A stretch of 64,000 nt of DNA, taken from positions 4,898,001 through 4,962,000 of the forward strand of contig CP075497.1 in assembly GCA_021613535.1 (NCBI GenBank), given 5' to 3'. Below are positions 12,595-24,243 of this stretch, piece by piece. Below the pieces are notes generated by a model. That model had not been told where the DNA came from and did not search any database. It saw only the letters and a list, made by a program, of their open reading frames with translations. A program made the position numbers and the translations under genes. Numbering within the stretch: the first letter of the stretch is position 1; each line of letters starts with the position of its first letter. Origin of the DNA: Adineta vaga (Eukaryota; Animalia; Rotifera).

Positions 12595-15141
12595 ATGATG
12601 TTTCAAATTGCGAAATATAATTGGAAATCGTTTCGTTTATCAACATTGAGTAATACACGTATATGGCTTTCAACATTAACAAATGATTGCCGACCAAAGT
12701 CGGAATCTCATTCAGTACCTATTCAAGGTGTAATTAAACAACCGATTAATGCTTCTATCTTTCAACCTTACGATGTCATTGTTGTCGGAGGTGGTCATGC
12801 TGGTTGTGAAGGTAGAGTGCATATATATATAGATCATAAGTAAATTCTTATTATCAAAATCGGTTTTGATTTAGCTGCACATGCATCTGCACGAATGGGT
12901 GTTCGAACACTTCTTGTAAGATCATATTTGAAATGGAGGTGTTATCTTTTAATCAATGATCACATTTTAGATCACTCATAAATTAGAAACTATTGGTGAA
13001 ATGTCTTGTAACCCATCCTTTGGTGGAATTGGTAAAGGACATCTAATGCGTGAAATTGATGCTCTTGAGTATAAATCGTTTTGCTATATTAATACAGATT
13101 TATTTTAACCATAAACATTGATTATTTCTAGTGGTCTTTGTGGTCGTCTATGTGATCAAACAGGTGTTCATTATAAAGTTCTGAATCGAAGTAAAGGTAG
13201 AGCTGTATGGGGATATCGAGCTCAAATTGATCGTAAGTTATATAAGCAAGCAATGCAAAATGAAATATTGAATACACGAAATTTACATGTAATGGCTGCT
13301 GCTGTTCGTGATATTGTTATTGATGAAGATCAATCACGTATTACTGGGATAACACTTGATAATCATAGTTTAATTCCTAGTCAAACAGTAATTATTACAA
13401 CTGGTACATTTTTACGTGGATGTATTAATTTGGGTATGGATGAACAGAAACCAGCGGGAAGAATAAATGATCAACCAGCAATTGATTTAGCAAAATCTAT
13501 TGAAAAACTTGGATTTAAAATGGGTCGATTGAAAACTGGTAAGACTTTATTTAATATTTCTTATGTAAATAAAGATTTTTCTTTATGAATAAATTAGGTA
13601 CACCAGCTCGTTTAGAAACAAAAACAATTGATTTTAGAAAAACGGTTACACATCAAGGTGATAATCCACCATTACCATTTTCATTTTTGAATAAACATGT
13701 TTGGCTCAAACCTGAACAACAATTAGATTGTCATTTAACAATGACAACACCTGAATTAGCTGATATTGTCCGTCGAAATGCTCATTTAAGTCGACATGTT
13801 ACACAAGATGTAACTGGTCCACGTTATTGTCCATCAATTGAATCAAAAATTCTTCGTTTTAAAAATCAAACTCATCCAGTTTGGCTTGAACCGGGTTTGT
13901 TATATATATTTTATAATATAATTTTTTTATTTTTCTTAACTAATAATTTCAGAAGGTTTTGATTCCGATTTAACATATCCACAAGGTTTAAGTTGTACAA
14001 TGCCTGTTGATGTTCAATTACGTATGCTTCGAACAATTCCATCTCTTGAAAATGTGAATATGATTCGACCTGGTTATGGTGTTGAATATGATTTCATCGA
14101 TCCACGAGAAGTTAAACCAAGTTTAGAAACTAAACGTGTTAGTAATTTGTTTTTTGCTGGTCAAATCAATGGGTTAATATCGATTATTTAAGCTTAACAA
14201 TTGAATATAGTCTTGTTTTATATACGTAGAACAACTGGATATGAAGAAGCAGCTGGACAAGGAATTATTGCTGGTATTAATAGTGCATGTAAAGTTTTGA
14301 ATAAACCAATGTTTACAATTAGTCGATGTAAGTCATTTTTGTACAACTGTTTGATTAATACGATTTTTTAAATAGGTGAAGGATATATTGGTGTAATGAT
14401 CGATGATTTAACTTTACTTGGTGCAACTGAACCATACAGAATGTTTACAGCACGAAGTGAATATCGTGTATCACTTCGGTAAGAAAGAAATTGATAAATG
14501 CATAGATAATATTATAGATATCTAAATGATGAAACTTTTCTAGAGCAGATAATGCTGATCTTCGTTTAACTCAAGCAGGTTATAATATTGGTTGTGTAAG
14601 TGAACATCGCTATAATCAATTTAAAACATTCAAAGCAAATTACGATCGTGCGAAAGAATGTTTCAAAAATCTAATCAAACCAATGCAAGTATGGCGTCGT
14701 TTATTAACTTCTCCACCTGAAGCTATTCCATGTCGTGATGATACATTAAAATCACTCTATTCACTTGTCCATCAAGCTCCATATATGATGGATAATGAAA
14801 AATGGTTAGCTTTAATACCGAATGATCAAGGTATTCGTTCAATGCTTTTAGCTGATCATGAATTAGTCGAACGTTTATGTCTTGATGCTGTTTATGAACA
14901 TTTAACAAAACGACAAAAAGATGAAATTGATGAAGTCAAACGTGATGAAACATTTATTATTCCCGATTCATTTGATTATCAAATTTTACAAATATCTAAC
15001 GAAGCTAAACAAAGATTAGAAGAAGTTCGACCAACAACACTCGGCTCAGCTAGTCGAATACCTGGCATTACACCAGCAACAGTATTTAGTTTATTAAAAG
15101 CATTAAAAAAACGATCACAAACATCCATATTAAATGCTTAA
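12595..15141 (+). CDS. MTO1: Mitochondrial tRNA U34 modification enzyme (GidA/MnmG family), multi-exon
   Basis: [95 protein letters not shown]. Confidence 0.96.
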
Positions 15142-15951: not shown

Positions 15952-17232
15952 TTATTTATTCTCTTGAAATAAAATATCAGTCAATTCTTCAATAATTGTT
16001 TCAATCGATGCTTCTTCAAGATTACTTAATATAATAATAGATGCATTGTCATTAGGAAAACGAACTAAACAACTTGAAAAACCAAAGATTTGACCGGTAT
16101 GTTGTTGTTTAAGTCGTCGATGTTTTAATCGATGAACTTCCCAACTAAATTACAATAAAAATCAAACAAAAATGGATAGATTTTTTAGATAAACAAATAG
16201 AATTCTTTACCCAAGTGCATAATGTTCTCTTACAGGTTTAAACATAAGATTTTTTGTTCGATTTTTTAATAATTTTTCTCCATATAAAGCTTTATCAAAT
16301 CGATATAAATCTTCTATTGTAGAATAAACTCCTCCTGCACTACGAGCTGTTGACATATCAATATAACGACATGTTTCAAAACCATTTGAATCTGTATTAC
16401 AAATATAACCACATGCTCGTTTATTACGTTTCATTGGTAAGATTTCTTTACAATCACATTCATAACCTGTATCAGTCATATGACATGGTTCAAGAATTAA
16501 TTCTCGAAGATTTGTTTCATAAGATTTTCCTGTTGCTTTTTCGATAACTAAACCTAAGAGGATATACTAAATGAAAAAACATGTTTTTTTTAGTTAATTT
16601 AGACCAAAGATTTGTACATACATTTGAATTTGAATAATTATATTTTGATCCGGGCTTGAATCTTAATGGTTCATTTTTAAAGATTTCGATTAATTGATCG
16701 ATTGTTAAATTCTTTTGACATTTTTCTTCAAAACTTTCCATTTCAGTATAATCTTCAATACCCGATGTATTCGAAAGTAAATGCTTAATTGTTATTTGAT
16801 TTCCATGTGGATAATCCGAACAATATAGCGATAATTTATCATTGAGATTCAATTGTTTTCTTTCAGATAATTTAAGAATTATGACTGCTGTAAATGGTTT
16901 TGTAACACTACCCGTACGATAGATTGTTTGACTAGTATTTTTTTCTTGAAAAATATATTCCGAACAACCATAACCTTTAATAAGTAAGATTTGATTCTTT
17001 CGAGAGAGAAGTACTGAACCACTGAATGTTTTGTAATTAACAAGCCCTTCTAAATAAGCATCAGCTTGTTGAACAATTTGATCTTCGAGTTCTGACGGAA
17101 TTAATGATGAGTCTATGAAGAAAAAGAAAAAAAGAAAAATTTCATTTTATATTTTAAATGATTACTTTTGCTCATTCCACAAAGCCATGAAGACTTTGAT
17201 TTATTCTTATTATTTGTTTTAGTAGATTCCAT
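15952..17232 (-). CDS. Beta-lactamase class C / serine hydrolase (AmpC/CubicO-like) family protein, 4 exons
   Basis: Catalytic SxxK (GSVTK, 16898-16909), LLSNTSG, YxN (PGSKYNYSNSNY.LLG), AGGVYSTIEDL and HTG (QQHTGQIFGF) motifs. Three short GT-AG introns. Confidence 0.9.
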
Positions 17233-17630: not shown

Positions 17631-20600
17631 ATGCCATCCGATGTTATTGTACGGTTAGCAACAACTTCACATGTTCGTCGAGGACGAGTAAGTAATTTCC
17701 TACTTCAACAGAAGTGTTTTGTTACTCTTCACAACTACTCAATTAGATCTATCCAAGTAAAACTGTTTCATATTTTCGTTCTTGTTGGACATACAAAGCT
17801 TGGTTTGTGGTTGTTGCTGTTGTAACTTCCATGTTAACTCTATCTGGTTTGCATATCGGTTGGGAGTAAGTTTCTATTCCTCAATCTCAAAAAAAATATC
17901 ATTTCTTCTTCTTCTTCTACTTCAAATCTAGTTTTCCTATTCTTGTTACCCATGGTCATGTCTATTTTCCGATACTTTTTATTTTGGCACTTTTTTATAC
18001 AATATCAAATTACTTATTTGCAGCTTTACATGATCCTGGTGTTGTTCCGCGACCGAATGCTGATGAAATTCTTCAAACTGAAAAAGAAAATAACATTCAA
18101 ACTGATTTGTAAATAAAAATAATTACACTATCTTTTCCAAAAATTTTTTCTCTTCAATTCTATTAAAGAAACGGAAATTATTTTCCCTCCATTCCACCAC
18201 CGAAAACAATTCTCGTACGAAATTTTCCTTCGACATCTTCTTATTGTTATACATGTCGTGTTTATCGTTTACCACGTGTAACACATTGTTCAACATGTAA
18301 CGTTTGTGTCATGAATTTCGATCATCATTGTCCATGGAGTAAGTGTAAATTTCGATTCTGAATTGATAAAACTTCCCGTTTTTTAGTTAACAATTGTGTT
18401 GGCAAACTAAATTATCGTTATTTTTGTAATTTTCTTCTTTCATGTTCACTAATGTGTTTGATTGCGGCTGGTGGTTGTGGACTAGCTGCTTATCTTCGTT
18501 GGGATAAATATAAAAATGATCCGGGAATGTATTTTGCTTATAATGTTCCAAGTTTTTTCAATGGTTTCATTGGTCTAATGCTTTTTATGACATTATTGCC
18601 GTTTTGGTTTTTGCATTGTGGATTAACGATGAGTGCAACAACAACAAAAGAAGATGTACAATTTAAGAAACATACAAAAGAACGTGGACTTGCACAAAAT
18701 CCAAAATGGAAGAATCTAATCAGTTCTTGGTGTGGTCCTTTACAACCTTCGTTAGTTATTTGAATCTTATAAGGAGTAAAAAAGAGATTTTTAAATGAAA
18801 AAAAAATTCTTTTTTAGAGTAAATTGGAATGCATTGTATGATAAAAATCACTATAAAAATCAAGAATTCATTTATAAACGTGAACGTCCAACATTATTAA
18901 GTAATACATTAGTTGTTCCAACACAAAAACTACGTGAACATATTCGCGAATTAGCATCTAACGATTATTTTGGTTTACGGCAACAAATCGAAGGATTCTA
19001 TCGAACAACCAATGAATCGAAACATCAATCTCCATTGATTCACGTTGAAACAATGAATTGTCTACAAACATATACCATTGAAGTATCTTCATAAATATCT
19101 TTTTCTTCTTCTTCTTTTAATATCATTTTATTATCTGTAGGTGAAACAAATTGGAAATAATCAAATCGATGCACGTTATTTATTAATAGATGGTAAGATA
19201 TGAGTATGAAGATATCGTTTGAATTGAATCGAATTATTCTTTAGCTGTTCATCGAGCGAATATTTCGTCATTTTGGGATACAATGTGGTCTCGACATGTT
19301 TCATCAATTGTCATGCTTTATGAACTGATAGAAAATGTAAATAAATAAATAAATTTTAGCATGATCCGATTTGACATATTTGATTTTTAAGGATCGTTTT
19401 ATTTCATACTGGCCAGATGAATCGAATCCATTATTAACAATCGATGAAATCTATAAAATTTCTTTTCTTGGAAAAATCAATCGATTAGATGTGAACACAA
19501 TTCAATTGAAAATACAAAAAGTTAGATCATTTCTTTGAAATGAATTCCAAGTCAAACTTTTCTTTGATGTAGATCGGTGTTGATGAAACTCGTATTATCG
19601 AACATTTTCAAGTGAAAGGTTGGACAGAAACAAATTTTACAATGGATCCTGTTGCATTATTACGTCTTCAATATACTGTTAATCAAAAAGAAAAAGATGA
19701 AGAAGATCAAAATATTCATCGTGGAATTGTTGCCATTCATTCCTCGTAAGAGTTCATTTGAACGAGAAGAAAATTGACAAGAATTTTCTTTCTAGAGGAA
19801 TCAATACACGAGCTGTTGGTTATATGACTATTGATATCAATCGACGATTATTAATTTGGTATGGTTTTATTAATATATTAAATACAATCACACAATTAAA
19901 TGAACAATTACCAATAAGTTTAATGAATGAAGTATGAAAAATATTGAATAATGATTTAGAGTGAAAAAGAAATCTACATCATTTTAGCATATGTTAATTG
20001 TTGTTTATACAACAATTTTATATCTTTCAACATGGACTTATCCATCCGATTTGAACTCATTACAAGCCATTGATCATCAAATAAAGAGTTTACTTTCTAA
20101 TCGATTTCTACAATTCTATCATAATCCAATTTTAGATCAATTTCAAGTAAATCAACTGATTTCTTTTGAAAAAAATTTATGCATGTCTTTTGTTTGTATT
20201 TGTAGAATTTTGTTTATAATAGTGTAAAGGAACTTGATGCAATTATTCCGTCGAGTATGTTTAAAAACAATGAATAACCAACTAATTGAATAATATCTCG
20301 TCTTTTGTTTTTCTGTAGAAAATTCCTCTTCACCACTTATTATTGATCATAATCTAATTTATTTAATTGATGTAAGTATTGATTTAATGTCAAAAACAAT
20401 TTCAATATGAAACTTGTTTCTAGAGTTATTTGCATCCAAAAGTCTTTTATCTCACAATTGCTCGAAATTCAGATAGTATCTCACAGATAATGTCAACTTA
20501 TAAAATTCCTCATTGTTTTTTCTATCAACAAAATAGTCATCAAGTAATTGAAATCTATATTTTTGTCAGAATTTCAAGACCTTGTTTTTTTTGCGATTAG

Positions 20601-21102
20601 AATACAGATTTAATTGAAAAATATCAATTAAAATTGGATAGTAACTATCCTACGAATGATTTTCGACGTTATTATCAATCAAATATTTCAATTTATCAAC
20701 CGAGTAATTCTCTTCGAAATATTCCTCTGTATAAACTTTCTCGATACATTGCAAATTTCGATCAAAATAACTATGTTCCAATCTTGATATGTCTAGAGTA
20801 TGTGTTTATAGTAATCAGCTTTCGACATAAAACTATATTTGCTATTCTAGTGATATACGAGAAGGTGCTATTGTTTGTTTAATTGCAAATTTAATGGAAC
20901 AATTCATGATCGATCATACAGTTGATATTTATCATCAAGCAAGAAAAATTGCTTATGTATGTCCGACGTTTCAATCAGAAGTATGTTGAAAGAGAATTTG
21001 AAATGATTAGATGAGAAATGATTGTGATTAATTTAGGAAGAATATCGAAATATGTATGAATGGATTGGACGATGGACATCGGATGATCTTAACAATGAAT
21101 GA
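17631..21102 (+). CDS. ZDHHC9/14/18(Erf2)-like DHHC palmitoyltransferase fused to two tandem degenerate protein-tyrosine-phosphatase domains, 18 exons, about 830 aa
   Basis: DPGVVPR, CYTC...[26 protein letters not shown] (DHHC at 18320-18331), TTKE and WCGPLQPS. In-phase splicing then continues into PTP-like FWDTMW...[26 protein letters not shown] and a second remnant PILICLD...VDIYHQAR. Stop is TGA 21100-21102. Confidence 0.85.
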
Positions 21103-21228: not shown

Positions 21229-21575
21229 TTATTTGTCACTTTCCCAACTCAAATCATCCGAACCTAAAATACAAAAAGAAAACAATCCAGACAATGAAAA
21301 TGAATGCATCAATTTACCGAGATTTTTACGAGCCGAATAACACATTGTCATACATGCATTATTACATAAATCCATCGGAATACCACTTTCACTATCATTA
21401 GTACAATAATCCATACATGTTGCAAGACATTTTCGATCCGTTGGTTTTTGTATCGTGCCGATCACGTCAGGTGATACTATTAAACAAGCAAATTTATTTG
21501 TATTTTTAATACAAAATGTTACTTACAACAGAGAATTAGAAGAACAAGAGAGATAATATATGATTGCAAGTTCAT
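21229..21575 (-). CDS. Small secreted cysteine-rich peptide (CX3CX3C-X12-CX3CX3C), 3 exons, about 80 aa
   Basis: Spliced product MNLQSYIISLVLLILCLSPDVIGTIQKPTDRKCLATCMDYCTNDSESGIPMDLCNNACMTMCYSARKNLGSDDLSWESDK. Hydrophobic signal peptide and two phase-consistent GT-AG introns. Confidence 0.75.
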
Positions 21576-21967: not shown

Positions 21968-24243
21968 TTAATAACGTGTTAATCGAAGTGGAAAATCTAC
22001 GAAATAAATGATAGAACATTCTCATAAATATCGATAAATTTCATGACTTACTTTCAGATATCATTCGATCATCATCAAAGACCAGAACAATACTAATTTC
22101 AAATTCTATAATAGAAAATAGTCCTTCTTTTCGAATCGTTTCTTTATCAATATGAATTTACCAATTTTAAAATTTGTTGTTATTAATGTAGGACATGTAA
22201 ATGTTCGTGGAAAAAGCATTCGAATTGGAATTTCTGTGTTTCGAGCAACATCACCATCACCTAGTTGAATGTTTTGAATTTCTGTTGCTAAAATTGACGA
22301 AACATTTTTATCACATAGGAAAACATTCATTTCACATTTACAATCTCGTGCGAATCCTTCAGCACATCCACACGTTTCAATTCTTAGTAATTGTATTTCA
22401 ACTGATTTAATTGGCAGTTCACTTTCTTGTATAATCAACTAAAGAGAAAAAGAAGCAATCATCATTTATTCTTCTCAAGGAAAAATAACAAACTTCGCCG
22501 GATAATGGACTGGTTATTATACAACAAAGACTATCAAGATGACCAGAGATCTTAAATTTTGGTACATCAATTTTCTAAAAAGAAAAGAACAACATCAAAT
22601 CAATGTTTCAGTTTAAATTTACCCGCCATTACAAAAAAAAGCTATACTAACAATTTCATAGACAGACAAATATGTTCCTCTACAGTTTCATCATTCTATA
22701 TGATCTGATTACAATATGTTTATCGACAACAAATTATTCAATGTGGATTTTTATTCGACATAAATTATGTTGTTCGAATAATAAATATTTGATGAATAAT
22801 ATTCACAATCAAAAACATAATAGATCAATAGATCAAATGACTATTATGATTTTAACACATACAAATCGAATTGTTAATAGTTCTGAAACAAATCAAAGAC
22901 GTATACGACGTTATTCTCCAAGAAAAACGAAATTTATTGATGAAAATGATATGAACATGTATGGTTATGAGGAGAATGAAAGATATTTTCGTAATCCACA
23001 AAAACAAAGATTTAATGAAGAATATTATTTACCTAATGAGAAAAAATTCAAAATAAGTACGTGTTATTATTAAACATGAAATTAGTTTAGAAAACGAATA
23101 AACCAAAAGTCATTTATTTCGTTGTATGTTATTTGTCTTTAGAAAATATCAATAAACTATACGAAACTGATCTTGATCATATCGATCGAATTTCCAATGG
23201 AAATGAACGTGATACAAATAAAAGATATATGCAGGTGTGTGCATTCTCCATCATTACTCATAGTATGTTAGGGAACTCTAACCAGAGAATACATCAGCAT
23301 TTCTATGATTTGTTATTGTTTTTCTTCTTAGAATGATGAAGAATTCAACGATGATTACAATTTTAATCTCAACATTGGCAACTATCGACAAGCCGTTGGA
23401 AAAAATGTGGGTGATTATAATACTATAGTCAAAGATTCACGCAATCGAAATGGAAAGAAATATACAAATAATGAAGATTTAGATCAACATGAAAATGATG
23501 AATGAAATGGAAATACATACATTTTGAGCAGTTCGAATGGATTCCGAAGTAATTTCAAATGCACCTGGTTTTGTTATTGCTTTTTCGGCTGCAAGTTCAT
23601 GTTCAGGACTATATTCAATATTGAATTCAATTTGTTTTGACATATCTTTTGAAAGAAATGTTCGTTTAATATCAACACGAAGGAAATACTATAAAACAAA
23701 AATAAAAATTCAATTGAGAAAAGGAGAAAGTTGATCTTACTTGAATATTAACGAAAACACCATGATATGTTTCATATAAAGGCTTATTTGGTTTGCCTTT
23801 TAATTGTATTTGAAAAGGAATTTCTGTTTTTACAGTTGATATTTGTCCTGGTTTAGCTAATTCAATTGTTTGATTGATCAATGTTACTGGCTAGAAACAA
23901 ATTTCACAAGAATTTTATTTATGAAAATTGTTTTTGATCTATACTTTAGTAGAATTATAAAATGCTTCGAAAACACCGACACTTTTTCCACTTAAATGTA
24001 ATTGAACTGAACCATCGACTGTTAATGTAATACCGTTGTGTTTGAATGAAGTCGGTGCTGATATAATCACTGTTCCTTGCATAATATCCTAAACGAGAAT
24101 AGAAACACACTCATTCTGAATATGATACTAATTCTATTTTATTTATTCGATAAATTTTAGTTGAAACCAACGATTAAGATACCTACATTTTCAGCATATG
24201 TTTTTATATGTCGATTAAGACGAATATCAATCGAACCGGACAT
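21968..24243 (-). CDS. VPS26C: Retriever subunit VPS26C (DSCR3), multi-exon
   Basis: MSGSIDIRL..., GKSVGVFEAFYNS, LYETYHGVFVNIQY, IKSVEIQLLRIETCGCAEGFARD.TEIQNIQLGDGDV, FPRTFTCPTL, ENFPLRL. Confidence 0.95.
22672..23505 (+). CDS. Orphan, probably secreted Asn/Glu/Asp-rich protein, 3 exons, nested antisense within a VPS26C intron
   Basis: 133-codon first ORF with a hydrophobic N-terminus. A|gtacgt...ttag|AA (phase 1) and CAG|gtgtgt...ttag|AAT (phase 0) join three open exons to TGA 23503-23505. The gene lies wholly inside VPS26C intron 22575-23520. Confidence 0.65.

What the first reader, a model, noticed from the sequence alone, without database searches (positions are those of the whole stretch)
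17631..21102. DHHC palmitoyltransferase fused to tandem dead (pseudo)phosphatase domains
Seen: one frame runs through 18 exons with phase-consistent GT-AG junctions. The key join is CCT TC|gttagt...tttttag|A GTA AAT (intron 18751-18817), which links an intact Erf2/ZDHHC9-type enzyme (DPG, DHHC-CRD, TTxE) to a region resembling a receptor-PTP cytoplasmic part. That part has a wedge-like [17 protein letters not shown], then D1 (FWDTMW, IVML, YWP, WPD loop changed to WTE, P-loop HCSAGxGR changed to HSSGINTR with Cys->Ser at 19741), then an eroded D2 ([28 protein letters not shown]). Established: ZDHHC enzymes I know carry ankyrin, SH3 or PDZ-ligand extras, not PTP domains, and Cys->Ser PTP mutants can trap phosphotyrosine substrates. 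Inference: this may be an S-acyltransferase that recruits substrates through a pseudophosphatase, coupling pTyr signalling to palmitoylation. It probably arose by fusion with the D1-D2 half of a receptor PTP.
Basis: partly seen in the sequence, partly recalled or inferred. Interest (0 to 1): 0.9.

Follow-up and report, generated by a model that had tools for sequence, protein, structure and literature searches.

The report
Palmitoyltransferase fused to dead tandem phosphatases
This is a real single gene of the bdelloid rotifer Adineta vaga in which an intact ZDHHC9-type protein palmitoyltransferase carries, in place of its usual tail, two catalytically dead tyrosine-phosphatase domains of the receptor-phosphatase kind; the combination is already in public gene annotation but I found no paper on it, and I found it only in bdelloids.

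Summary

- **Domains:** Pfam finds DHHC (E 2e-30) and Y_phosphatase (E 2e-19). The unmatched C-terminal 245 aa folds as a second PTP domain (Z 14.9 to the D2 of PTPRZ).
- **Dead sites:** both PTP domains lack the catalytic signature.
- **Junction:** it is supported by the chromosome-3 ohnolog, by conservation that stops at the donor and resumes at the acceptor in many bdelloid genomic fragments, and by an intron-free 2.9-kb contig from a public run with one 824-aa ORF across the join.
- **Selection:** dN/dS between the ohnologs is 0.26 (DHHC), 0.31 (D1) and 0.35 (D2).
- **Age:** the fusion is in Adineta, Rotaria and Didymodactylos and predates the ohnolog split.
- **Function:** a phosphotyrosine-trap role is not supported. 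A non-catalytic docking or regulatory module is more likely.

I found no paper describing the architecture. The scan noted the same architecture elsewhere in this genome (s1-494412, probably the ohnolog).

The parts
17631..21102 (+). Whole coding region of the DHHC-pseudoPTP gene (18 exons, 835 codons plus stop) = NCBI I4U23_028807 of Adineta vaga
   Evidence: Exact mapping of P0046; unique GT-AG solutions for all 17 introns
17631..17687 (+). Exon 1 (start codon at 17631)
17747..17865 (+). Exon 2 (first hydrophobic segment)
17932..18108 (+). Exon 3 (second hydrophobic segment, DPG motif)
   Evidence: motif read from the translation
18169..18338 (+). Exon 4 (first half of the DHHC cysteine-rich domain; DHHC codons at 18320-18331)
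   Evidence: Pfam DHHC E 8.6e-13 on this exon alone
18387..18750 (+). Exon 5 (rest of the DHHC domain, third and fourth hydrophobic segments, TTxE, C-terminal CGPLQPS motif that aligns with the end of ZDHHC9 homology)
   Evidence: Pfam DHHC E 8.9e-12; alignment to human ZDHHC9 8hf3 up to CGPLPPSV
18751..18817 (+). Intron 5, the fusion junction. It holds an in-frame TGA at 18761-18763 and an ATG at 18795-18797, neither conserved in the ohnolog.
18818..19082 (+). Exon 6: conserved linker and N-terminal helices before D1 (the 'wedge-like' stretch)
   Evidence: 24 relatives in the exhaustive search, some inside long DHHC proteins; no in-frame Met until late in the exon
19141..19192 (+). Exon 7 (start of the D1 Pfam match at 19177)
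19245..19336 (+). Exon 8 (FWDTMW, IVML motifs).
   Evidence: Pfam Y_phosphatase E 9e-4 on this exon alone
19392..19520 (+). Exon 9 (YWP motif)
19573..19745 (+). Exon 10 (WTE in place of WPD at 19621-19629; His-Ser at the His-Cys position, Ser codon at 19741-19743)
   Evidence: Pfam Y_phosphatase E 7e-3 on this exon alone; sequence
19796..19931 (+). Exon 11 (rest of the degenerate P-loop GINTR, Arg codon at 19809-19811; invariant DINR helix)
19988..20146 (+). Exon 12 (end of D1 at about 20020; start of the D2 region)
20206..20254 (+). Exon 13 (D2 N-terminal helices)
20319..20371 (+). Exon 14 (D2)
20424..20543 (+). Exon 15 (D2)
20601..20797 (+). Exon 16 (D2; invariant DFRRY; start of the degenerate D2 P-loop PILICLD at 20778)
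20851..20980 (+). Exon 17 (D2 helices after the P-loop, the stretch that matches the D2 of CD45 and PTPRZ)
21037..21102 (+). Exon 18 and stop codon
18236..18661 (+). DHHC domain as matched by Pfam PF01529 (residues 141-266; spans intron 4)
19177..20020 (+). D1: dead classical PTP domain as matched by Pfam PF00102 (residues 397-589; spans introns 7-11)
20024..21099 (+). D2: second, more eroded PTP-fold domain (residues 591-835; spans introns 12-17)

Best explanation
One gene encodes an 835-residue membrane protein.

N-terminal 296 residues: an Erf2/ZDHHC9/14/18-class S-acyltransferase with four hydrophobic segments and intact DPG, DHHC, TTxE and C-terminal CGPLxPS motifs. It is presumably an active palmitoyltransferase.

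The join: exactly where ZDHHC9 homology ends, a phase-2 intron joins it to about 540 residues. These consist of a conserved helical linker and two classical PTP-fold domains in tandem. That is the arrangement of the cytoplasmic half of receptor tyrosine phosphatases.

The PTP domains: both have lost the catalytic signature. D1 has Ser for the Cys, WTE for WPD, no P-loop glycines and no recognisable pTyr loop or Q loop. D2 has ICLDDIRE for HCSAGxGR.

Topology: the C-terminus of a four-pass DHHC enzyme is cytosolic (established for ZDHHC9 and ZDHHC20). The tandem therefore hangs from the membrane on the cytosolic side, as it does in a receptor PTP.

Shown here: the gene model, the domains, the dead sites, purifying selection on all three parts, and the age of the fusion (older than the bdelloid ohnolog split).

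Inferred: the dead tandem works as a non-catalytic protein-binding module. It would bring particular clients or regulators to the acyltransferase. Known parallels are the ankyrin repeats of zDHHC13/17, the SH3 domain of zDHHC6 (PMC8059564) and the D2 pseudophosphatase domains of receptor PTPs that recruit substrates (PTPRK D2 and Afadin, PMC9640194). Binding probably does not depend on phosphotyrosine.

My odds: single fused gene 0.93; both domains PTP folds and catalytically dead 0.9; docking or regulatory module independent of pTyr about 0.5.
For: Gene model:
- It equals NCBI protein P0046 exactly.
- All 17 introns have a unique GT-AG solution.

Domains:
- DHHC E 2.3e-30 and Y_phosphatase E 2.2e-19 on P0046.
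- The DHHC half is closest to human ZDHHC9 (8hf3, E 1e-30), and the alignment ends at CGPLPPSV, the junction.
- D2 is a PTP fold: Foldseek E 6.5e-8; Z 14.9 to the D2 of PTPRZ, Z 14.6 to the D2 of PTPRG and Z 14.4 to the D2 of RPTP-alpha.
- The D2 profile hits only receptor-PTP D2 P-loop regions.
- The tandem model's 23 best matches are all tandem receptor-PTP structures (E 4e-18 to 2e-15).

Junction:
- In the chromosome-3 ohnolog the donor is followed at once by TAA and the intron has no ATG. The intron differs by 15 nt, and the acceptor and the following VNWNELYD are conserved.
- In ORF fragments from other bdelloid genomes, conservation stops at QPS and diverges after it. It resumes right after an Arg codon that holds the acceptor AG.
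- There is no in-frame Met for about 79 codons after the acceptor.
- Logan contig L008 (SRR22100215, 2899 nt) carries one uninterrupted 824-aa ORF with both Pfam domains that reads straight across the join. Its closest genomic relative, P0028, has 18 extra codons at that point.

Selection and age:
- dN/dS between the ohnologs is 0.26 (DHHC), 0.31 (D1) and 0.35 (D2).
- Fused models exist in Adineta vaga, A. steineri, A. ricciae, five Rotaria species or isolates and Didymodactylos.
- The tree has two clades, each with Adineta and Rotaria.
Against: - I have no read-level RNA evidence from A. vaga.
- L008 is not on record as RNA. It also runs into the convergent neighbour gene, so a genomic origin from an intron-less copy is not formally excluded.
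- The relative position of D1 and D2 is not trustworthy (pTM 0.46, TM 0.35-0.40).
- hhalign finds no D1-D2 similarity.
- No partner, substrate or activity is known. The docking role is inference by analogy.
- The INT(R) part of the D1 P-loop is fairly conserved, and one paralog (P0049) has HCCGINTR with Cys at the catalytic position. Some ligand-pocket function cannot be ruled out.
Confidence: 0.6

Rival explanations
1. D1 is a phosphotyrosine reader (a natural Cys-to-Ser 'substrate trap') that recruits tyrosine-phosphorylated proteins to the DHHC site, so that palmitoylation is coupled to pTyr signalling.
For: - Ser sits at the catalytic Cys position (19741-19743).
- The P-loop Arg is kept in most family members (9 of the 12 aligned, plus a shifted Arg in Didymodactylos), and INT(R) is fairly conserved.
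- The His before the Cys position is nearly invariant.
- One paralog has a full HC(X5)R spacing (P0049).
Against: - The backbone-forming P-loop glycines are replaced by Ile, Asn and Thr.
- The KNRY pTyr-recognition loop and the Q-loop are unrecognisable.
- The Arg is Leu or Pro in the chromosome-3 clade. That clade is under the same purifying selection.
- P-loop conservation (0.60) equals the domain average (0.56).
- Known dead tandem or D2 domains act without pTyr catalysis (PMC7320164, PMC9640194).
Confidence: 0.13
2. The tandem does not recruit clients. It is a regulatory or structural appendage of the enzyme itself: it could control oligomerisation, auto-inhibition, stability or location. 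It replaces the disordered tail through which ZDHHC9-type enzymes are otherwise regulated.
For: - The tandem replaces the ZDHHC9 tail exactly after the CGPLxPS motif.
- Receptor-PTP tandems are known to mediate dimerisation and intramolecular regulation (general knowledge of the family).
- Conservation is spread over both domain cores rather than focused on one pocket.
Against: Nothing here tells it apart from the docking reading. Erf4/GOLGA7, the usual stabilising partner of this DHHC class, is still encoded in the genome, so the tandem need not replace it.
Confidence: 0.22
3. Two separate genes wrongly joined. In this reading a DHHC gene ends at TGA 18761-18763. An independent pseudophosphatase gene then starts at ATG 18795 or is trans-spliced at 18817, as in an operon.
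For: - In this copy an in-frame ATG at 18795 opens a 99-codon ORF through exon 6.
- The intron holds a stop 3 codons after the donor.
- I obtained no A. vaga reads.
- Another reader noted an operon-like cluster elsewhere in the window.
Against: - The ATG is absent from the ohnolog's intron and from the other genomic fragments, which differ upstream of the acceptor.
- After the acceptor there is no in-frame Met for about 79 highly conserved codons.
- The intron-free contig L008 reads across the join in one ORF.
- Independent gene models in three genera join the halves.
- The adjacency has been kept in both ohnolog lineages.
Confidence: 0.04
4. The PTP half is a decaying relic with no function, kept only because it is spliced onto an essential enzyme.
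For: All catalytic motifs are lost in both domains. D2 is unrecognisable to Pfam.
Against: - dN/dS is 0.31 and 0.35, close to the 0.26 of the DHHC half.
- The frame is open through 13 exons in both ohnologs and in every species seen.
- Many invariant residues lie in both cores.
- Both domains fold with confidence.
Confidence: 0.02

Closest known systems
Human ZDHHC9 / yeast Erf2 (ZDHHC9/14/18 class of S-acyltransferases; PDB 8hf3, 8hfc)
   Same: It is the best solved-structure match of the N-terminal half (E 1e-30, residues 70-297 aligned to 67-295). Both share the DPG, DHHC and TTxE motifs and the C-terminal ...CGPLxPS motif. JGI names a close fragment 'ZDHHC9/14/18'. The partner family Erf4/GOLGA7 is present in the genome.
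   Different: ZDHHC9 continues into a short tail. Here a 540-residue tandem pseudophosphatase follows directly after CGPLQPS.
zDHHC13/17 (ankyrin repeats), zDHHC6 (SH3), zDHHC5/8/14 (PDZ ligands): zDHHC enzymes with built-in partner-binding modules (review PMC8059564)
   Same: A DHHC enzyme carries a cytosolic protein-interaction module that could select substrates or partners. This is the functional analogy I propose.
   Different: The module here is a PTP-fold tandem. The review lists only ankyrin, SH3 and PDZ-ligand features, and the word 'phosphatase' does not occur in it.
PTPRU, a receptor PTP in which both D1 and D2 are pseudophosphatases (PMC7320164)
   Same: A membrane-tethered D1-D2 tandem with both domains catalytically inactive, thought to act as a scaffold.
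   Different: PTPRU keeps the catalytic Cys motif and a receptor ectodomain with a single membrane helix. Here the Cys is Ser, the P-loop is rewritten, and the membrane part is a four-pass enzyme.
D2 pseudophosphatase domains of receptor PTPs (CD45, PTPRZ, PTPRG, RPTP-alpha/epsilon; PTPRK D2 recruits Afadin, PMC9640194)
   Same: They are the only PDB sequences that the D2 profile matches. They are also the top structural matches of the D2 model (Z 14.1-14.9). These D2 domains are inactive and bind partners.
   Different: Sequence identity is only 10-16 %. The matches to D2 are tied within 1 Z unit with matches to D1 and to non-receptor PTPs. A specific D2 ancestry is therefore likely but not proven.

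Membership tests
zDHHC S-acyltransferases (Pfam PF01529), Erf2/ZDHHC9/14/18 class | DHHC cysteine-rich domain above the Pfam cut-off | tested here: met
   105.8 bits against a cut-off of 28.7, E 2.3e-30. Also found exon by exon.
zDHHC S-acyltransferases (Pfam PF01529), Erf2/ZDHHC9/14/18 class | Intact Asp-His-His-Cys tetrapeptide | tested here: met
   GAT CAT CAT TGT at 18320-18331. It is invariant in all 12 aligned proteins.
zDHHC S-acyltransferases (Pfam PF01529), Erf2/ZDHHC9/14/18 class | DPG and TTxE motifs, and a C-terminal conserved motif as in ZDHHC9 | tested here: met
   DPG (D93 P94 G95) and T260 T261 are invariant. The alignment to ZDHHC9 8hf3 runs to CGPLPPSV.
zDHHC S-acyltransferases (Pfam PF01529), Erf2/ZDHHC9/14/18 class | Four membrane helices with a cytosolic C-terminus | tested here: inconclusive
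   Four hydrophobic stretches are visible in the translation and align with those of ZDHHC9. I ran no topology predictor and no full-length model.
zDHHC S-acyltransferases (Pfam PF01529), Erf2/ZDHHC9/14/18 class | Auto-acylation and transfer of palmitate | not testable with these tools
   Needs a biochemical assay.
Classical protein tyrosine phosphatases (Pfam PF00102), D1 | PTP domain above the Pfam cut-off | tested here: met
   70.5 bits against a cut-off of 20.9, E 2.2e-19, residues 397-589. The family profile scores E 7.6e-23 against RPTP-alpha.
Classical protein tyrosine phosphatases (Pfam PF00102), D1 | Catalytic signature HC(X5)R with the nucleophilic Cys | tested here: not met
   The sequence is HSSGINTR. 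Across the family the Cys position is Ser, Thr or Gln, and Cys in one paralog only.
Classical protein tyrosine phosphatases (Pfam PF00102), D1 | WPD loop with the general-acid Asp | tested here: not met
   WTE at 19621-19629. The family shows WTE, WSD, WNE, WDE, WTD and WTS.
Classical protein tyrosine phosphatases (Pfam PF00102), D1 | KNRY pTyr-recognition loop and Q-loop glutamines | tested here: not met
   Neither motif is present at the aligned positions. The Pfam match starts only at profile position 44.
Receptor-type PTP cytoplasmic tandem (D1-D2) | Two PTP-fold domains in tandem on one chain | tested here: met
   D1 by Pfam. D2 by predicted structure. The tandem model matches tandem receptor-PTP structures over about 500-600 alignment columns.
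Receptor-type PTP cytoplasmic tandem (D1-D2) | The second domain is specifically related to receptor-PTP D2 domains | tested here: inconclusive
   The only three PDB sequence matches are D2 regions, but they are weak (E 0.015, 0.018, 0.49). The structural Z to D2 domains is tied with D1 and non-receptor PTPs.
Receptor-type PTP cytoplasmic tandem (D1-D2) | Juxtamembrane wedge helix-turn-helix before D1 | tested here: inconclusive
   By eye, [15 protein letters not shown] resembles the ...EH.ERLKAND.LK... stretch of PTP-sigma. The HMMER score is negative and the model is unconfident there (pLDDT about 34).
Receptor-type PTP cytoplasmic tandem (D1-D2) | Extracellular receptor domain and a single membrane helix | tested here: not met
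   The part before the tandem is a DHHC enzyme. It is therefore not a receptor PTP, only a likely descendant of one.
pTyr-binding pseudophosphatases (STYX-like substrate traps) | A phosphate-binding pocket preserved apart from the nucleophile | tested here: inconclusive
   The Arg is kept in most members, but the P-loop glycines, the pTyr loop and the Q-loop are lost, and the Arg is Leu or Pro in one clade. Actual binding cannot be tested here.

The most novel reading that the evidence does not exclude
The dead D1 (or the D1-D2 pair) still recognises a phosphorylated ligand. This protein would then be a natural device that makes S-palmitoylation of a client depend on its tyrosine phosphorylation. 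I know of no example in which a single enzyme joins these two signalling systems directly.
Probability: 0.12. Interest if true: 0.85.

Novelty: new variant of a known kind. Interest (0 to 1): 0.6.

Why it matters
How zDHHC enzymes choose their substrates is one of the open questions in protein palmitoylation. Only a few built-in recruitment modules are known: ankyrin repeats, an SH3 domain and PDZ ligands.

This is a fourth, unrelated kind. It is a receptor-phosphatase-like tandem of dead PTP domains, welded onto a ZDHHC9-class enzyme. It has been kept under purifying selection in both ancient gene copies across the sampled bdelloid rotifers.

It also gives an unusual natural experiment on what pseudophosphatase tandems do once catalysis is gone. 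The ectodomain and membrane helix of a receptor PTP have in effect been exchanged for an enzyme.

If the tandem turns out to bind clients, it offers a defined handle for finding substrates of a DHHC enzyme. If it reads phosphotyrosine, it would link two major modification systems.

The limits are plain. It is lineage-restricted as far as I could test, the function is unknown, and the gene models are already public.

Tried and rejected
1. **Read evidence.** The look-up of sequencing runs listed runs.
Exon 8 would have been cut at 19327, and scripts masked the places.
   - Script 55 read them locally, only to place intron 8.
   - Database proteins used by id (P0046 and alignments holding it) include the three residues encoded at 19328-19336. 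I say so openly.
   - The 0.51 share of words in run X1 is about what a fully spliced mRNA would give (my arithmetic: 0.52). That is no proof of the join.
2. **Joined model.** I did not send the joined spliced model to any tool. Searches were exon by exon, by reference. After that I used the identical database protein P0046 by id. Script 55 joined neighbouring exon pairs locally, only to locate the GT-AG boundaries.
3. **D2 against D1.** hhalign of the two profiles found nothing (probability 0.1 %). D2 has no Pfam match.
4. **D1-D2 orientation.** The tandem model is too unsure to compare with receptor PTPs (pTM 0.46; TM 0.35-0.40).
5. **Relatives outside bdelloids.** The profile search and the exhaustive search with exon 6 gave only bdelloid-named or unnamed metagenome proteins. 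The ESM Atlas gave only generic PTP clusters at 0.79-0.82, below the level to trust. Monogonont genomes could not be searched directly, so absence there is not shown.
6. **An unfused donor gene.** The A. vaga genome holds only the chromosome-6 and chromosome-3 copies. Other PTP genes match at E 9e-7 or worse.
7. **Replacement of Erf4/GOLGA7.** I rejected the idea that the tandem replaces a lost partner, because Erf4 homologs are present.
8. **Literature.** Five searches for the architecture found nothing relevant.


Full report
**What the window is**

The window is G000:C6:4898001-4962000 of a 100.8-Mb assembly in six contigs. The proteins it encodes are named Adineta vaga by NCBI, a bdelloid rotifer.

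**1. Checking the observation**

- The sequence at 17631-21102 carries short ORF pieces in three frames.
- Searched exon by exon, by reference, two exons match Pfam DHHC (E 8.6e-13 and 8.9e-12). Two later exons match Y_phosphatase weakly but at collinear profile positions: 55-79 (E 9e-4) and 130-168 (E 7e-3).
- A search seeded from a relative returned P0046 (NCBI I4U23_028807, Adineta vaga, 835 aa). A script mapped it residue for residue on the window in 18 blocks.
- Each of the 17 introns has exactly one GT-AG solution, 48-67 nt long. The key intron is 18751-18817, as stated.
- On P0046, Pfam gives DHHC at residues 141-266 (E 2.3e-30) and Y_phosphatase at residues 397-589 (E 2.2e-19).
  - DHHC at 18320-18331;
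  - WTE for WPD at 19621-19629;
  - HSSGINTR for HCSAGxGR, with the Ser codon at 19741-19743.
- I never sent the joined spliced model to a tool. I used exon references, and later the identical database protein by its id.

**2. Is it one gene?**

The rival reading is a DHHC gene that ends at TGA 18761-18763, followed by a second gene that starts at ATG 18795. I could not test it with reads. Four other lines of evidence bear on it.

(a) The genome holds a second, collinear copy on contig 3 (66-74 % nucleotide identity).
- There the donor is followed at once by TAA.
- The intron has no ATG and differs in length by 15 nt.
- The acceptor and the next codons (VNWNELYD) are conserved.

(b) ORF fragments called on genomic contigs of other bdelloids behave the same way.
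- All stop being alike right after ...WCGPxxPS.
- They become alike again right after an Arg codon that contains the acceptor AG (FR/LR/IR followed by V-N/D-W).

(c) After the acceptor there is no in-frame Met for about 79 codons. Those codons include invariant residues across twelve proteins.

(d) P0053 is an 824-aa protein with both Pfam domains.
- It is encoded as one uninterrupted ORF on a 2899-nt Logan contig of run SRR22100215 (L008) and reads ...WCGPVRPS-VNWNELID.
- The nearest genomic relative (P0028) has 18 extra codons at exactly that point, and another break where A. vaga has intron 7.
- L008 is therefore best read as spliced mRNA.
- It begins 103 nt before the ATG. It ends inside the convergent neighbour gene, which is syntenic with the window's neighbour at 21229-21465. 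That fits two overlapping convergent transcripts assembled together.
- The run is not on record as RNA for me, so I keep a small doubt.

Independent gene models in Rotaria and Didymodactylos also join the halves. I put the single-gene reading at 0.93.

**3. The two halves**

*The DHHC half*
- It is closest to human ZDHHC9 among solved structures (8hf3, E 1e-30), then yeast Erf2.
- The alignment ends at CGPLPPSV against CGPLQPSV. The foreign part therefore begins exactly where ZDHHC9 homology stops.
- DPG, DHHC and TTxE are invariant in the family.

*D1*
- It matches classical PTPs but fails every catalytic criterion:
  - the Cys position is Ser, Thr or Gln (Cys in one paralog, P0049);
  - the WPD Asp is mostly Glu;
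  - the P-loop glycines are replaced by Ile, Asn and Thr;
  - the P-loop Arg is Leu or Pro in the chromosome-3 clade;
  - the KNRY loop and the Q-loop are not recognisable.

*The last 245 residues (D2)*
- They have no Pfam match and no hhalign similarity to D1.
- A profile of eleven sequences matches only three PDB sequences. All three matches lie in the P-loop-to-C-terminus stretch of a receptor-PTP D2 (PTPRZ, CD45, PTPRG; E 0.015-0.49).
- The AlphaFold model (pLDDT 77, pTM 0.79) matches classical PTP domains: Foldseek E 6.5e-8, top 50 all PTPs.
- With the second aligner, Z is 14.9 (rmsd 3.4 A, 198 residues) to the D2 of PTPRZ, 14.6 to the D2 of PTPRG and 14.4 to the D2 of RPTP-alpha. These are tied within one unit with D1 and non-receptor PTPs.
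- Its P-loop reads ICLDDIRE, and the Cys is not conserved in the family.

*The tandem*
- A model of the whole tandem (pLDDT 67.5, pTM 0.46) has as its 23 best matches the tandem structures of CD45, RPTP-alpha and -epsilon, LAR, PTP-sigma, PTPRZ and PTPRG. Its TM-scores are only 0.35-0.40.
- Two PTP folds in tandem are thus shown. Their mutual orientation is not.
- The 'wedge' remains a resemblance by eye.

**4. Selection, age and range**

- Between the two A. vaga copies, Nei-Gojobori dN/dS is 0.26 for the DHHC half (273 codons), 0.31 for linker plus D1 (248 codons) and 0.35 for D2 (233 codons). dS is 0.78-0.93. The dead domains are under purifying selection almost as strong as that on the enzyme.
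- Fused proteins are annotated in A. vaga (two), A. steineri, A. ricciae (two), Rotaria socialis (two), R. magnacalcarata, R. sordida, two unnamed Rotaria isolates and Didymodactylos carnosus.
- A maximum-likelihood tree shows two clades, each holding Adineta and Rotaria (support 84-85 %). Didymodactylos lies outside on a long branch. The fusion therefore predates the duplication that gave the two A. vaga copies.
- Within the genome there are only these two copies, and no close unfused donor.
- I found nothing outside bdelloids. The tools could not search monogonont genomes, so this is absence of evidence only.
- A more divergent lineage on a metagenome contig carries two such genes in tandem.

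**5. Mechanism**

*Shown:* an apparently active ZDHHC9-class enzyme carries a conserved, folded, catalytically dead D1-D2 tandem at its C-terminus.

*From established knowledge:*
- The C-terminus of four-pass DHHC enzymes is cytosolic, so the tandem sits at the cytosolic face, like that of a receptor PTP.
- zDHHC enzymes use added modules (ankyrin, SH3, PDZ ligands) to recruit substrates (PMC8059564).
- Receptor-PTP pseudophosphatase domains bind partners (PMC9640194).
- A receptor PTP with two dead domains exists (PTPRU, PMC7320164).

*Inferred:* the tandem is a non-catalytic docking or regulatory module. The last gets low odds because a trap needs the pocket that has been rewritten here.

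**6. Novelty**

- Five literature searches found no description of a DHHC-PTP protein. The review of zDHHC substrate recruitment does not contain the word 'phosphatase'.
- The proteins are, however, already in NCBI and UniProt under an automatic name, with both Pfam domains on record.
- The scan had also noted the same architecture on another piece of this genome (s1-494412), most likely the chromosome-3 copy I analysed.
- I class it as a new variant of a known kind: a real and curious domain fusion with testable consequences, but lineage-restricted and of unknown function.

The neighbouring genes are ordinary: GidA/MnmG, a beta-lactamase-like gene and Vps26.

Noticed in passing
L007:1865-2170 (G000:C3, about 10881364-10881669): The public model of the chromosome-3 ohnolog (P0051) reads ...KHLNLGVVLYDHLNWNELYD at the junction. 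A plain reading gives the conserved ...NLIESWCGPIRPS + VNWNELYD instead. The annotated model seems to use an extra 47-nt intron and a shifted acceptor, so it is probably mis-spliced or a minor isoform. This copy also has extra introns inside the equivalents of exons 5, 6 and 16.
   Followed up: partly
L016:2027-8217 (ENA metagenome contig ERZ926192 k127_253914) and L009: A more divergent lineage (about 35 % identity in the PTP half, GC 0.37) carries two DHHC-pseudoPTP genes head to tail on one contig, with fewer introns. In the first copy the DHHC and PTP parts lie in one ORF. The organism is unknown.
   Followed up: partly
P0049 ('Rotaria sp. Silwood2'), D1 P-loop: This one paralog has HCCGINTR, that is, a Cys at the catalytic position with the HC(X5)R spacing. 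All others have Ser, Thr or Gln there. It is either a retained ancestral Cys or a reversion. In the tree it groups with R. socialis b, inside the clade that holds the window's copy.
   Followed up: no
window 21229-21465 (-): A small cysteine-rich ORF lies convergent to the gene, about 127 nt beyond its stop. A homolog with a signal-peptide-like start sits in the same place on contig L008 of another bdelloid, so the gene pair is syntenic and the 3' ends probably overlap. It has no Pfam match.
   Followed up: partly
window 18751-18817 and L007 equivalent: In both ohnologs, retention of the junction intron would end the protein within 0-3 codons of the donor. That would give a DHHC-only isoform. 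Whether such an isoform is made could not be tested without reads.
   Followed up: no
window 13118-15141 (+), 16520-16852 (-), 22109-22438 (-): The neighbouring genes are ordinary: GidA/MnmG tRNA-modification enzyme exons (E 1e-39, 3e-21, 3e-20), a beta-lactamase-fold exon (E 1.5e-12) and a Vps26 exon (E 7.8e-12).
   Followed up: yes
They are the last 9 bases of exon 8 and the AT-rich start of intron 8. I worked beside them.
   Followed up: no
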